Positions 14,788 to 57,594 of a stretch of 64,000 nucleotides of DNA are shown here, one piece after another (position 1 is the stretch's first letter; every line of letters starts with the position of its first letter). Origin of the DNA: Laetmonice hystrix (lineage: Eukaryota); the NCBI GenBank assembly GCA_965235115.1, contig OZ249437.1, positions 10,850,001 through 10,914,000 on the forward strand, in the 5' to 3' direction. Position numbers and translations under genes: made by a program. The notes under the pieces are model-generated. The model was not told the origin of the DNA and made no database searches. It was given only the letters and a program-made list of their open reading frames with translations.

Positions 14788-15344
14788 GGGTGCGTTTCAC
14801 TAAGCCCGAAATGGTCGCTGAGCAGAGGTCTTTGCGGCGACGGGTGTTTCACTAACCATTCTTTAAAGGTAATCGATCACCCTACGACCGCCGAGTTTTG
14901 TCCCCATCTCCTACGAATCCGCGTATTTCAAGCTTACCTGATCTTGAATCTATCCCACTGGACTGATAAAAGATTCTGTCCTATCCATAACATTGTTGTG
15001 CAAGGTTTCTTGTTGATTATGAGCCATAATGAGGCGATACATCCCATATTTTTCATCTCAATGGACTGAGAACCGAGAACACCGCCATGACCGCGTTAGC
15101 ATTGTTAGGGCGGTCATTACTAAGCAACGGGATTGGGCGCATGCGTTGCCTCACACTGCTCCGCCCGCCCTCCCCTCATAATCCAAATAAAATATTGTCG
15201 ATATGGACGCGCCATGGTACCAGACTGCTAGAAACTCCTTAAAAAAATTGTTTTTACTCAAGTTTTGTTGAATTGACTTTCGGACAGATTTCCTTTAACA
15301 TTGTCCTCGCTGCAAAAGACGTCTTTCGTTAGTGAAACGCAGCC
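14788..15344. mobile_element. GGGTGCGTTTC-type MITE interrupted by a nested Kolobok-like MITE
   Basis: Ends GGGTGCGTTTCACTAA and TTAGTGAAACGCAGCC; internal GTCTTTGCGGCGACG and AAAGACGTCTTTC match the element at 56252-56426 in reverse orientation. Confidence 0.75.
14867..15294. mobile_element. Kolobok-like MITE, TTAA TSD
   Basis: TTAA|AGGTAATC ... GATTTCCT|TTAA; removing it restores the surrounding MITE. Confidence 0.7.
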
Positions 15345-54312: not shown

Positions 54313-54329
54313 GTTCGCCAAATTGGGCG
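54313..54329 (+). pseudogene. 3' remnant of a tRNA-Lys copy
   Basis: GTTCG..ATTGGGCGA preceded by TTCACCCT and followed by TTGACCTCAATCACCTCA, the same flanks as the copy at 55335. Confidence 0.5.
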
Positions 54330-54544
54330 AAAAATTTTGACCTCAATCACCTCATATATAGTCAAGGAAATGCCTCTACAATTTCCAGAAATTCAGCGAA
54401 GCTGACATTAATCAGACCCTTTTTGGCTTGACATACTATAGCCTAATAAACGTTTGCAGTGTCACGCAAATAACGTCAACCCCTTTTACGTAATTTCATT
54501 CTATATAGGCCTAGTGGAAATGATGGAAGAGGTGCGGAAGTTGA

Positions 54545-54737
54545 AGGCCTAGACACACATGGGCGTCAAGCGGCAAGCGTCGAGCGTCAAGCGTCATTTT
54601 GAAAATGAGTATGGGAGCGTTGTTTTTTGACGCGCCGCCCAGGGTATGTGAACCACACTGAGCATTCAGAGCGTCATTTTAAAAATGACGCTTGACGCTC
54701 GACGCTTGACGCTTGCCGCCCATGTGTGTCTAGGCCT
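54545..54737. mobile_element. 193-bp MITE, PIF/Harbinger-like
   Basis: Perfect 21-bp TIR AGGCCTAGACACACATGGGCG; internal GCGTCAA/TTGACGC repeats; flanks TGA/TTA. Confidence 0.85.
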
Positions 54738-54828
54738 TTACCAGGGCCGTCAAGCTTAATTCTGTCATTCTCCTGCAGGATTCTGAAGTTATATTTTTAT
54801 ACTCATCCTCCAAAAAAACATATAGAAA

Positions 54829-54901
54829 GCCCGGTTAGCTCAGTCGGTAGAGCATGGGACTCTTAATCCCAGGGTCGTGGGTTCGAGCCCCACATTGGGC
54901 G
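54829..54901 (+). tRNA. tRNA-Lys(CTT), intact
   Basis: 73 nt GCCCGGTTAGCTCAGTCGGTAGAGCATGGGACTCTTAATCCCAGGGTCGTGGGTTCGAGCCCCACATTGGGCG; stems pair, anticodon CTT, A and B boxes intact, TTTT terminator just downstream. Confidence 0.96.
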
Positions 54902-55334
54902 AAATATTTTATCATTTAATAGGCCTAGCTGCAATGTATGACTCGTCAGACCTCTTTGAAAGTTCGTAGTGCAGGACTAAACTTCATGAGAATACTAGCT
55001 GATTTTTAGCATATTTTTGCGACTATGGAGGATTTCCAGTGCATCTCACATCAGGACATCCCCATCATCAGTGAGTCTTTAGGTTTGACGTCTCCACCAG
55101 AGTCAGAGAGACCTATAACTACTACACCTACCTTGAATGATTCCTTGTATGGGGAGTTTCTTTGTCAGTCCGACCTCATCATCATCCCCTTGGGACTTGG
55201 AGGTACAATATATTACTGTTTAAATTTTGAAGGTTCCATCCTTATCCTGAAGATCATGGCTGAAGAATAGATCTAAGCGTCAAACTCCTAATTCCCATAA
55301 TTTGCCCAAAATTCACCCTAAAAATAATTAGAAA

Positions 55335-55407
55335 GCCCGGTTTGCTCAGTCGGTCGCGCATGGGACTCTTAATCTAAGGGTGGTGGGTTCGAGCCCCACA
55401 TTGGGCG
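55335..55407 (+). pseudogene. tRNA-Lys(CTT) degenerate copy
   Basis: Six substitutions vs the intact copy, including A-box changes and CCAGG to TAAGG, which breaks the anticodon stem. Confidence 0.85.
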
Positions 55408-56206
55408 AAATTTGTTGACCTCAATCACCTCAGTCAAAGAAATGCCTCAACAATTTGTAGAAAAATTTAACGAATCTATCACATTAATCAAACCCTTTTT
55501 GGCTTGAAATACTAGTCTAATAAATGTTGCAGTGTCACGTATAATAACCTCAACCCCTTTTATGTAATTTCTTTCTATATAGCCTAGAGGTTATATGTCG
55601 TCCTCATTGAGCAAGCGTCTAACCTGAAATGATGGAAGAGGTGCGGAAGTTGAAGTGCTGGGGACAGCGAATTCATGAATGAGACCGAGACCGAATTCGT
55701 TTGGACTAAAATGTTTTATTACGACATGGTAAGAAGTAGATCTAGATAAAATAATAAAAGAAATGTTGGTATATAATAAAATGGGTAATAAAATATTGTT
55801 TTCGTGGGAAGTATATTTTTGAGAGAGGTTTGTTTAGTAGGGTGAGTTTAATGGTTAGTAAGATCGTTTGAGATTTCAGTTTCTTTAGTATTAATGGCCC
55901 ATGGGAGTGATTTAAGTTAATGTAAGGTTACGTTAATATGGGATGGGCGGGAGGGTAAAAGACGTGTGTGTCGGAGGGTAGCAGAGAGGAAAGTGACCGA
56001 GTGAGAGGCGCCCCAGGGAAGGTGAAAGAAAATTGGGCCCGGACGTGACGTGTAGATGGCGGAGATTCAGGTCTCAGACCATTCATTATGCGCAATGAAA
56101 TACATTACGGACAATGTTACCAGGGCCGTCAAGCTTAATTCTGTTATTAAGCTGCAGGATTGTGCAGTTAGATTTTTGTACTCATGCTGTAATAATTAAA
56201 TATAAA

Positions 56207-56459
56207 GCCCGGTTAGCTCAGTCGGTAGAGCATGGGACTCTTAATCCCTGCCAGGGGTGCGTTTCTGTAAGGAAAGATGTCTTTGCGCAAAGAGTCTTTC
56301 AAAAGAGTCTTTTCGAAACCAGTGTTAAAGAATAGAGTGTTATAGAAATACCACGTCGCCGCAAAGACTCTTTGGGTTCAGCGAGGGTCTCAAAGAGTCT
56401 TTTGGGCTTTATAGAAACGCACCCTGCCAGGGTCGTGGGTTCGAGCCCCACATTGGGCG
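56207..56459 (+). pseudogene. tRNA-Lys(CTT) interrupted by a MITE
   Basis: Both halves identical to the intact copy; 180 extra nt in the 3' strand of the anticodon stem. Confidence 0.92.
56252..56426. mobile_element. MITE inserted in tRNA-Lys
   Basis: TIR GGGTGCGTTTCT(G/A)TAA with CAG/CTG outer trinucleotides; internal CAAAGAGTCTTT repeats; 11-nt direct repeat CCCTGCCAGGG spans both junctions. Confidence 0.9.
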
Positions 56460-56728
56460 CAATATTTTATCTGCCTAGCTATGAGAGACCTATATGGCTA
56501 GGCTAGAATGAGAGAACTATACTATATTATACACCCTGATTCCTTTGTGTCTGCGGGTTTCTTTCTCAGTCCAACCTCATCATCATCCCCTTGGGACTTG
56601 GAGGTACAATATATTACTGTTTAAATTTTAAAGGTTCCATCCTTATCCTGAAGATCCTGGCTGAAGAATAAGCATCAAACTATAATTTGGCCAAAATTCA
56701 CCCTTTAAGCCTCACACGGAAATACAAG

Positions 56729-56787
56729 GCCCGGTTACCTCAGTCGGTAGAGCATGGGAGTCGTGGGTTCGAGCCCCACATTGGGCG
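56729..56787 (+). pseudogene. tRNA-Lys copy lacking the anticodon loop
   Basis: 59 nt; exact deletion of CTCTTAATCCCAGG plus one substitution. Confidence 0.9.
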
Positions 56788-57203
56788 AACAAGTTTTTCT
56801 CCCTACCCCTTCACTCCTTCAACTGATGACTCCTTCCACGTTGAAGGTCGCCACACAGTTATTTGAAAAGGTACATCAGTCACAGATTCACTCAGGTAGA
56901 CCGTAACCCGTTAAACATAACAAACACCATCTACAAACGTGTTTTGATGCATGCATTATTTTCATGCAGTTCTGATTATTAGAAGAAACGAGTTTATTGT
57001 ACTATCCGTGACCTTAGAGTTAGAGCTAGAAGTAAGTCTACATGACCAACCAATAGGTTGAAGAAGTACTGAGATATGCCCTGAAATGTGTTATTTATCA
57101 AAGAAAATCCTTTGACGTGCATCATGCCACGAGGCATGATCTTGTGTTAAAATATGAAAAGGATTGGACCACACGTTCTTGATCATTTGATGTATCGCTG
57201 TTC

Positions 57204-57247
57204 ACGGACGGACGGACGGACGGACGGACGGACGGACGGACGGACGG
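57204..57247. repeat. (ACGG)11 microsatellite
   Basis: Perfect tetranucleotide run. Confidence 0.95.
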
Positions 57248-57266
57248 AGGGTGAATTAGAAGCCCC

Positions 57267-57525
57267 CTGGGGCCGGTTTGTTTTGGTTTACTTTTTCACC
57301 ATGAGCAAGGGTGAGCTGAGCTGAGCAAGGGTGATGCTCACCGTTTTGCTCACTGTTTTCGTTTTTTGGGGTGTTTTTCCGTAAGCTTGCTCACCATGAA
57401 AACGTCTCATGTAAAAAAGCAACCCAAACAAAGCCAAAACGGTGGGAATGAGCTCATGCTCACCCTTGCTCAGCTCAGCTCACCCTTGCTCACGGTGGAA
57501 AAGTAAACAAAAAAACCGGGCCCAG
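57267..57525. mobile_element. ~260-bp MITE with ~65-bp imperfect TIRs, Harbinger-like
   Basis: CTGGGGCCGGTTT..TTTACTTTT.CACC.TGAGCAAGGGTGAGCTGAGCTGAGCAAGGGTGA mirrored at the right end, which ends CCGGGCCCAG. Confidence 0.85.
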
Positions 57526-57541
57526 GTTGGGGGCTAAAAAT

Positions 57542-57594
57542 ATGTGACTCCTAATCCCTGGCCTGGGTCGCGAGTTCGAGCCCCACATTGGGCA
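57542..57594 (+). pseudogene. 3' two-thirds of a degenerate tRNA-Lys copy with a CCTGG duplication
   Basis: TGTGACTCCTAATC-CCTGG-CCTGG-GTCGCGAGTTCGAGCCCCACATTGGGCA; 5' part missing next to a MITE. Confidence 0.8.

What the first reader, a model, noticed from the sequence alone, without database searches (positions are those of the whole stretch)
54829..57594. tRNA-Lys copies all damaged at the same 5-bp CCAGG site: a recurrently targeted transposon site
Seen: the intact gene reads AATC-CCAGG-GTCG. The copy at 56207 carries a TIR element there and is exactly 180 nt longer (175-bp CAG...CTG element plus 5 bp), otherwise identical to the intact gene. The copy at 57542 reads AATC-CCTGG-CCTGG-GTCG (+5 nt, footprint-like; also parsable as CTG-G/C-CTG, a 3-bp TSD plus one residual base from each TIR). 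The copy at 56729 has a 14-nt deletion whose right breakpoint is the end of CCAGG. The copy at 55335 has CCAGG changed to TAAGG. Recalled knowledge: Dada transposons target tRNA/snRNA genes but lack long TIRs; zebrafish Harbinger3 prefers palindromic CCWGG-centred sites with a CWG TSD. Inference: insertion, excision-footprint and deletion stages of a TIR transposon that repeatedly hits the anticodon stem of tRNA-Lys(CTT), possibly an undescribed tRNA-targeting family. Caveats: the TSD parse is ambiguous (3, 5 or 6-7 bp), the lesions may not be independent because the array is tandemly duplicated, and a relative of the MITE lies at a non-tRNA site (14788).
Basis: partly seen in the sequence, partly recalled or inferred. 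Interest (0 to 1): 0.78.

Follow-up and report, generated by a model that had tools for sequence, protein, structure and literature searches.

The report
Ordinary MITE hit in decaying tRNA-Lys cluster
A common small transposon that lands on CWG triplets anywhere in this genome has recently broken one tRNA-Lys gene in a small, decaying gene cluster, and nothing suggests that it seeks out tRNA genes.

Summary
The sequence facts are all correct. There is one intact tRNA-Lys(CTT). One copy is otherwise identical but carries 180 extra bases. One has a 14-nt deletion, one a +5 CCTGG-CCTGG variant, and one a CC-to-TA change. All of these touch CCAGG at tRNA positions 41-45.

The insert is a 170-bp MITE only 0.6% from its family consensus. 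The genome holds at least 722 candidate copies and 597 canonical ends. Its ends start with GGG and are flanked by CWG, which defines the published NuwaI group of the PIF/Harbinger (PHIS) superfamily.

The family is not tRNA-directed:
- None of 80 other copies with resolvable ends sits in a tRNA.
- About 48 other tRNA-Lys(CTT) genes are intact at this site.
- The family shows only a mild CCWGG preference, and the genome has about 1.35 million such sites.

CCAGG is the only favoured target in the gene, so any such event would map there.

The +5 variant may be an old excision footprint (about even odds). The substitutions, the 14-nt deletion and a newly found near-total deletion look like ordinary decay.

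Two curiosities remain. This copy has four CWG triplets at its junctions instead of two. Across the family, 36% of copies have mismatched middle bases in their two flanking triplets.

No autonomous partner was linked.

The parts
54829..54901 (+). Intact tRNA-Lys(CTT). CCAGG is at 54869-54873 (tRNA positions 41-45). This is the only favoured CCWGG-type CWG site in the gene.
   Evidence: ARAGORN. CWG sites in the gene are only at position 13 (TCAGT context) and position 42 (CCAGG context).
55335..55407 (+). Decayed tRNA-Lys copy with six base substitutions, including CC-to-TA at positions 41-42. ARAGORN still calls it.
   Evidence: 91.8% identity over 73 nt.
56207..56459 (+). tRNA-Lys copy split by the MITE. 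The 5' part (56207-56248) and 3' part (56427-56459) are each 100% identical to the intact gene.
   Evidence: Removing 180 nt in silico restores a tRNA-Lys(CTT) called by ARAGORN.
56255..56424 (.). 170-bp NuwaI-type (PIF/Harbinger superfamily) MITE. Its termini are GGGTGCGTTTCT ... AGAAACGCACCC. It differs at 1 of 170 positions from the family consensus. It contains two TTTT runs (56310, 56400) that would stop RNA polymerase III.
   Evidence: (I3).
56248..56254 (+). Left junction CTG-C-CAG: two CWG triplets where a canonical insertion has one.
   Evidence: compared with canonical junctions. Not a family feature.
56425..56430 (+). Right junction (C)TG-C-CAG. This is the same 7-mer as on the left, sharing its first C with the element's CCC end.
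56729..56787 (+). tRNA-Lys copy with a 14-nt deletion of positions 32-45 and one substitution.
57542..57593 (+). 3' fragment of a tRNA-Lys copy (positions 26-73), about 10% diverged, with +5 nt (CCTGG-CCTGG, which also parses as CTG-GC-CTG). Unique in the genome.
57270..57523 (.). A second, unrelated NuwaI-type MITE. Its ends are GGGCCGGTTT ... AAACCGGGCC, with flanks CTG and CAG. It ends 15 nt upstream of the tRNA fragment and is not the cause of the +5.
   Evidence: I1; at least 1196 candidates, with family matches covering 57266-57527.
54315..54330 (+). Remnant of a sixth tRNA-Lys copy. Only about the first 3 and last 10 nt remain. Its flanks are homologous to those of the 55335 and 56729 copies.
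   Evidence: 55396-55590 matches 54318-54517 at 82%..

Best explanation
The 170-bp insert is a copy of an abundant, recently active MITE. It belongs to the NuwaI group of the PIF/Harbinger (PHIS) superfamily. These elements have ends starting GGG and integrate at a CWG triplet, which they duplicate.

The family prefers CWG flanked by C and G (CCWGG) about four-fold and shows no wider specificity. The tRNA-Lys(CTT) gene has only two CWG triplets. Only the one at positions 42-44 sits in CCWGG, so any insertion of this kind into any copy of the gene must map to that spot.

One such insertion recently inactivated a copy that had been kept identical to the functional gene (shown). It lies in a minor cluster of five to six copies that is otherwise decaying by substitutions and by deletions of 14 to about 60 nt (shown).

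My estimates for the other lesions:
- The +5 variant is an old excision footprint of a CWG-targeting element with odds of about 50%. The alternative is an A-to-T change plus a 5-bp tandem duplication.
- The 14-nt deletion is transposon-related with odds of about 15%.
- The TAAGG change is transposon-related with odds of about 5%.

Lesions are seen only here probably because damaged copies persist in a dead cluster, whereas the large arrays on contig 1 are kept uniform (inferred). The family does not target tRNA genes.
For: Family and class:
- At least 722 candidates, with top copies 97-99% identical.
- 140 exact left-end 25-mers and 597 exact canonical ends, against 1 in the control.
- CWG sits on both sides in 51 of 81 unique copies, and the element ends are GGG...CCC.
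- NuwaI is defined by a CWG duplication and TIRs starting GGG (PMC4482050).

Age: the window copy is 1/170 from the consensus. The flanks of the two array units are only 78-87% identical.

Target preference:
- C at -1 in 45% of copies against 24% background.
- G at +1 in 51% against 27%.
- CCWGG in 24% against 6% (p = 4e-5).
- No signal at +/-2.
- Extrapolation gives about 1.35 million CCWGG and about 96,000 CCCWGGG sites in the genome.

No tRNA link:
- In-silico empty sites of 80 other copies gave 0 tRNAs, and the positive control worked.
- No tRNA lies within 1.5 kb of 29 copies.
- No MITE terminus lies within 1.5 kb of 30 other tRNA-Lys genes.
- All tRNA-Lys(CTT) loci outside the window are intact at CCCAGGG.

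Decay: there are six substitutions in the 55335 copy and a near-total deletion at 54315-54330.
Against: - For this one family the expected number of hits in the roughly 50 tRNA-Lys CCAGG sites is only about 0.01. That figure assumes 700-1500 copies, 24% of them in CCWGG, spread over 1.35 million sites. The hit is therefore lucky unless many CWG-targeting families or open chromatin at tRNA genes are counted.
- If the +5 is a footprint, two events fell in a five-copy cluster. That is more than this simple model predicts.
- The junctions are not canonical. There are four CWG triplets, forming a 7-bp CTGCCAG repeat on both sides. This hints at more than one transposase-mediated event at this copy.
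- Pseudogenes with mutated anchor sequences would escape the pattern searches.
- Only about 110 of several hundred copies were inspected.
Confidence: 0.75

Rival explanations
1. Local hotspot. Two or more independent insertion and excision cycles of CWG-targeting elements occurred at this same triplet within the cluster. In this reading the +5 is one footprint. The CTG-C-CAG at the MITE junctions is an earlier +4 footprint that was then re-used and duplicated. The 14-nt deletion may be an excision-associated loss. The cause would be local re-insertion plus the extra CWG triplets that each event creates, not recognition of the tRNA.
For: - The +5 has the form CWG + G + C + CWG, where G and C are the terminal bases of the element ends.
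- The middle base of the triplet is flipped (CTG, against CAG in the gene). This is common at real insertions of this family: 19/51 have discordant middle bases.
- PIF/Harbinger elements with mismatched duplications give more footprints, some of them keeping both triplets (PMC4561436).
- The MITE copy has a 7-bp CTGCCAG repeat on both sides that the intact gene lacks. The family as a whole does not show this: 3.4% of ends against 3.6% background.
Against: - PIF/Harbinger excision is mostly precise, and matching triplets (CTG/CTG) should repair cleanly.
- A 7-bp duplication is not the family's chemistry.
- The MITE is far younger than the diverged +5 fragment, so the events would be unrelated in time.
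- The +5 can also arise from an A-to-T change plus a tandem duplication.
Confidence: 0.35
2. One reading: an undescribed transposon family that specifically recognises the anticodon stem of tRNA-Lys(CTT). This would make it functionally like Dada.
For: Several copies in the cluster carry lesions overlapping one 5-bp site, and one of those lesions is a bona fide insertion.
Against: - None of 80 other family copies is in a tRNA.
- About 48 other tRNA-Lys genes are untouched.
- Target preference extends only one base beyond CWG.
- The family matches the NuwaI definition.
- It fails the Dada definition: 6-7-bp duplication, no TIRs, copies inside target RNA genes (PMC3706591).
Confidence: 0.03
3. 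Assembly artefact: the insertion or the small variants are mis-assemblies of a repetitive tRNA cluster.
For: The region is repetitive. The right junction lacks one C of a homopolymer run, which is a typical long-read error.
Against: - The five copies have distinct, diverged flanks (78-87% identical), which makes collapse or chimeras unlikely.
- The insertion is a complete element with both ends.
- Three runs of one study hold about 65% of the sampled words of the stretch, but they may be the source sample.
Confidence: 0.03

Closest known systems
NuwaI group of the PHIS (PIF/Harbinger-ISL2EU-Spy) superfamily (Han et al. 2015, Mobile DNA, PMC4482050)
   Same: Both have a 3-bp CWG target duplication and TIRs beginning GGG within the stated 12-61 bp range. 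Both are found in animals and occur in many copies. The genome is rich in DDE_Tnp_4 (Harbinger-type) transposase genes.
   Different: This is a 170-bp non-coding derivative. Han et al. searched by transposase and state that MITEs may have been missed. No autonomous partner with the same ends was identified here.
Tourist-like MITEs such as mPing mobilised by Ping/Pong (PIF/Harbinger); excision model of Gilbert et al. 2015 (PMC4561436)
   Same: Both are short TIR elements with a 3-bp duplication that is palindromic apart from a W centre. Staggered cleavage inside the duplication would explain the mixed middle bases and footprints that keep both triplets.
   Different: mPing uses TWA rather than CWG. 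No transposition chemistry was tested here, so the carry-over of donor triplet strands is my inference.
Dada transposons targeting tRNA and snRNA genes (Kojima and Jurka 2013, PMC3706591)
   Same: Both involve a DNA transposon found inside a tRNA gene. The window copy happens to be flanked by a 7-bp direct repeat.
   Different: Dada makes 6-7-bp duplications, lacks terminal inverted repeats, and its families lie inside their specific RNA genes. This family has clear TIRs and 3-bp CWG flanks, and it lies almost entirely outside tRNAs.
Harbinger3_DR of zebrafish
   Same: Both have a CWG duplication centred in CCWGG.
   Different: Harbinger3_DR is recalled to need a long palindromic target of about 15-17 bp. 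Here only the bases at -1 and +1 are enriched.

Membership tests
NuwaI (PHIS superfamily) | Target site duplication 5'-CWG-3' | tested here: met
   51 of 81 unique copies have CWG directly at both ends. 597 exact canonical ends were found genome-wide. The intact paralogous tRNA has CAG at the insertion point. Caveats: the two middle bases disagree in 36% of copies, and the window copy has two triplets per side.
NuwaI (PHIS superfamily) | TIRs of 12-61 bp whose first three bases are usually GGG | tested here: met
   The ends are GGGTGCGTTTCT / AGAAACGCACCC: 12 perfect bases, or 16 nt at 94% (I3).
NuwaI (PHIS superfamily) | Autonomous partner encoding a DDE transposase and a Myb/SANT protein between the same ends | tested here: inconclusive
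   The genome has 151 PF13359 matches scored out of 720 candidates, many with open frames of 350-475 aa. No TIR-to-transposase link could therefore be made.
MITE (generic) | Short, non-coding, with TIRs, flanking duplication, high copy number and homogeneous length | tested here: met
   The element is 170 bp. Anchor-to-anchor length is 164 +/- a few nt in most copies, and there are hundreds of copies.
Dada | 6-7-bp target duplication | tested here: not met
   The family flanks are 3-bp CWG. Only the window copy shows a 7-bp repeat, and the intact target lacks 4 of those 7 bases. Definition from PMC3706591.
Dada | No terminal inverted repeats | tested here: not met
   Clear TIRs are present.
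Dada | Family copies inserted in one specific small-RNA gene | tested here: not met
   None of 80 other copies is in a tRNA.
tRNA intron | Located between positions 37 and 38, and specific to the gene | tested here: not met
   The insert lies between positions 41 and 45 and is a dispersed repeat.
Harbinger3_DR-like site-specific Harbinger | Long palindromic target consensus around CCWGG (recalled from memory) | tested here: not met
   Only positions -1 (C) and +1 (G) are clearly enriched. Positions 2-8 on each side show at most weak, untested skews.

The most novel reading that the evidence does not exclude
The cluster may be a natural record of PIF/Harbinger-type chemistry at a single triplet. 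Three observations would support this reading:
- A canonical target (CAG) sits beside a filled site that keeps four CWG triplets.
- A paralogue shows a CWG-GC-CWG footprint.
- Across the family, 36% of copies have discordant middle bases in the two flanking triplets.

Together these would mean that NuwaI elements leave the donor with single strands of the old duplication attached, as piggyBac does. They would then form a mismatched heteroduplex at the new site. Elements with mismatched triplets would excise imprecisely, creating extra CWG targets and local hotspots.
Probability: 0.3. Interest if true: 0.5.

Novelty: new member of a known kind. Interest (0 to 1): 0.27.

Why it matters
A new DNA-transposon family aimed at tRNA genes would have been a notable find, because Dada is the only such superfamily described. 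The evidence shows this is not one. It is a routine insertion by a CWG-targeting Harbinger-like MITE, at the only good target the gene offers, in a cluster that is already dying.

What remains useful:
- It is a clean example of a tRNA gene killed very recently by a MITE.
- It documents two abundant NuwaI-type MITE families in this genome. Published surveys of that group were based on transposases and may have missed MITEs.
- It gives a testable hint about the transposition chemistry: mismatched flanking triplets in a third of young copies, and a junction with doubled triplets.

Tried and rejected
Later patterns used only MITE ends or the stretch 57236-57540. Empty, filled and footprint alleles and assembly errors therefore remain untested.
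None of the truncated copies I hold lies near a listed transposase hit.
- Extended-TIR subfamily: I tested whether CTGCCAG belongs to longer termini. It does not. 20 of 597 canonical ends are followed by N-CWG, which equals the background CWG frequency.
- SINE or repeat origin of the 57542 fragment: rejected, because it is unique in the genome.
- Second MITE as the cause of the fragment's 5' truncation: rejected. Its end plus triplet stops at 57526, 15 nt before the tRNA homology.
- Copy L016 seemed to show a long flanking duplication like the window's. It lies in a locally repetitive stretch, so I did not use it.
- The relative at 14788 is only a left end (GGGTGCGTTTCAC) with weak internal similarity. 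It is not informative.
Full report
**What is there**

ARAGORN finds two tRNA-Lys(CTT) genes in the window, at 54829-54901 and 55335-55407. BLAST of the intact gene against the window finds three more copies:
- 56207-56248 plus 56427-56459, both parts 100% identical to the intact gene and separated by extra DNA.
- 56729-56787, with a gap.
- 57542-57593, covering tRNA positions 26-73 only, at 81% identity.

- The intact gene reads AATC-CCAGG-GTCG, with CCAGG at positions 41-45.
- The split copy is exactly 180 nt longer. Removing 180 nt restores a tRNA that ARAGORN calls.
- The 56729 copy lacks positions 32-45.
- The 55335 copy has CC-to-TA at 41-42.
- The fragment reads CCTGG-CCTGG.

Three things were not in the finding:
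- The 55335 copy has four other substitutions.
- The fragment is 5'-truncated and about 10% diverged.
- There is a sixth copy at about 54315-54330. Only the first three and last ten or so bases survive. Its flanks match those of the 55335 and 56729 copies.

The array consists of two diverged repeat units (78-87% identical flanks) plus stragglers.

**What the insert is**

A genome search with the insert gave 722 first-look candidates. The 40 that were scored are 97-100% identical. An exact 25-mer of the left end occurs 140 times. The canonical end AGAAACGCACCC-CWG occurs 597 times, against 1 for the reversed control.

I aligned 29 copies with long flanks and fetched 80 more. The element is 170 bp, running from GGGTGCGTTTCT to AGAAACGCACCC, which is 56255-56424 in the window. 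Of 81 unique copies, 51 have CWG immediately outside both ends.

This is the definition of the NuwaI group of the PIF/Harbinger-ISL2EU-Spy superfamily. NuwaI elements have a CWG duplication, TIRs of 12-61 bp that usually start GGG, and are found in animals (Han et al. 2015, PMC4482050).

The window copy differs from the family consensus at 1 of 170 positions. It is thus far younger than the array. The tRNA it split is still identical to the functional sequence although its flanks are only 87% identical. That copy was therefore probably a working gene until the insertion (inference). The element carries two TTTT runs. By established knowledge these stop RNA polymerase III.

**Is the family aimed at tRNAs?**

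No. Four results show this:
- I rebuilt the empty site for 80 other copies and ran ARAGORN. It found 0 tRNAs, while the same procedure on the window copy returned tRNA-Lys.
- No tRNA lies within 1.5 kb of 29 copies. No end of this MITE lies within 1.5 kb of 30 other tRNA-Lys genes.
Each returned 50 loci, about 53 distinct loci in all. Every locus outside the window reads CCCAGGG at the site. None holds an insertion there. The only variants elsewhere are a C-to-A at position 40 in two copies and a 6-nt insertion near position 26 in one.
- Target preference is modest. C occurs at -1 in 45% of copies against 24% background. G occurs at +1 in 51% against 27%. Full CCWGG occurs in 24% against 6% (p = 4e-5). 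There is nothing at +/-2.

Extrapolating from 156 kb of sequence, the genome holds about 1.35 million CCWGG and about 96,000 CCCWGGG sites.

The gene has only two CWG triplets, and only the one at 42-44 is in CCWGG. Any insertion of this kind into any copy would therefore land at the same place.

**How surprising is the coincidence of lesions?**

- With five mutational events in 73 nt, the 55335 copy has about a 0.3 chance of touching a given 5-nt window.
- A 14-nt deletion overlaps that window with a chance of about 0.3. It has a breakpoint in or at it with a chance of about 0.16.
- The near-total deletion overlaps it trivially.

These three lesions need no transposon.

The +5 is different. 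It reads CTG-G-C-CTG, that is, two triplets separated by the first and last base of a GGG...CCC element. Both middle bases are T where the gene has A.

Gilbert et al. 2015 (PMC4561436) showed that mPing, a PIF/Harbinger MITE, is cut out by staggered cleavage inside the duplication. Excision is mostly precise. With mismatched duplications it leaves more footprints, some of which keep both triplets. The +5 is compatible with that. It is equally reachable by an A-to-T change followed by a 5-bp tandem duplication. I put it at about even odds.

A second, unrelated NuwaI-type MITE lies 15 nt upstream of the fragment (57270-57523, at least 1196 candidates, flanks CTG/CAG). CWG-targeting elements are therefore very common here, which raises the prior for such events.

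**What does not fit**

A canonical insertion would read AATCC-CAG-[element]-CAG-GGTCG. The window reads AATCC-CTG-C-CAG-[element]-(C)TG-C-CAG-GGTCG. That is four CWG triplets, with the same 7-mer CTGCCAG on both sides.

This is not an extended terminus of a subfamily. Only 20 of 597 canonical ends are followed by N-CWG (3.4%), which equals the background CWG frequency of 3.6%.

Two models are possible:
- The target already carried a +4 footprint (CTG-C-CAG), and the whole double site was duplicated.
- Both the donor-derived and the target-derived triplets were kept at each junction.

Whether the repeat is direct or inverted rests on a single base. I leave this unexplained.

**A family-wide oddity**

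The middle bases of the two flanking triplets disagree in 19 of 51 copies. Thirteen further end pairs read add 4 more, giving 23 of 64 (36%). The proportion is the same in copies above and below 97% identity, so mutation cannot account for it.

If the element leaves with one strand of each old triplet attached, as staggered cleavage in the duplication implies, a mismatch at W would form at the new site. Either base could then be fixed. This is my inference and was not tested.

**Limits**

From then on I sent no tRNA letters to any search tool and worked beside those places.
The abundant DDE_Tnp_4 transposase genes (151 scored matches of 720 candidates) could therefore not be checked for matching ends.
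- About 110 of several hundred copies were inspected.
- Pseudogenes with mutated anchor sequences would be missed by the pattern searches.

**Verdict**

The headline claim is wrong, because this is not a tRNA-targeting family and there is no genome-wide recurrence. The finding is a new member of a known kind and of modest interest, with two small mechanistic curiosities worth a bench test.

Noticed in passing
family-wide (loci L002-L141; places listed): The middle base of the two CWG triplets flanking this MITE disagrees in 23 of 64 copies (36%), whatever the copy's age. A plain fill-in duplication should give identical triplets. This suggests that donor triplet strands travel with the element.
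   Followed up: partly
window 57270-57523: A second MITE family with GGG-starting ends (GGGCCGGTTT...), a long internal palindrome and CTG/CAG flanks. It has at least 1196 candidates genome-wide, at about 88-95% identity.
   Followed up: partly
window 54315-54330: Remnant of a sixth tRNA-Lys copy with nearly the whole gene deleted. Its flanks are homologous to those of the 55335 and 56729 copies.
   Followed up: partly
G000:C1:71037214-71037273: One tRNA-Lys(CTT) gene in the large contig-1 array carries a 6-nt insertion that makes GCATGG-CCATGG-GAC. This is a palindromic-looking duplication near tRNA position 26. Two other copies (C1:70704468 and C1:70707938) have C-to-A at position 40.
   Followed up: no
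G000:C12:27558645-27930799: At least 25 DDE_Tnp_4 (Harbinger-type transposase) open frames of 399 aa, with identical scores, are spaced about 13 kb apart. A transposase gene is part of a large tandem repeat. Smaller arrays of the same kind lie at C1:26.03-26.08 Mb (7 kb period) and C11:22.36-22.37 Mb (6 kb period).
   Followed up: no
window 54544-54738: A 65-nt inverted repeat (95%), with arms at 54544-54608 and 54674-54738, lies just upstream of the intact tRNA gene. It is a foldback or MITE-like element of unknown family.
   Followed up: no
window 14788-14870: Left end of a relative of the MITE (GGGTGCGTTTCAC) preceded by CAT rather than CWG. There is no matching right end nearby.
   Followed up: partly
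window 57196-57251: (ACGG)n microsatellite of about 13 units, directly upstream of the second MITE.
   Followed up: no
G000:C7:13394569-13429398: Six copies of the MITE lie within 35 kb. The four copies fetched have identical flanks, so the element was carried along by a segmental or tandem duplication.
   Followed up: partly
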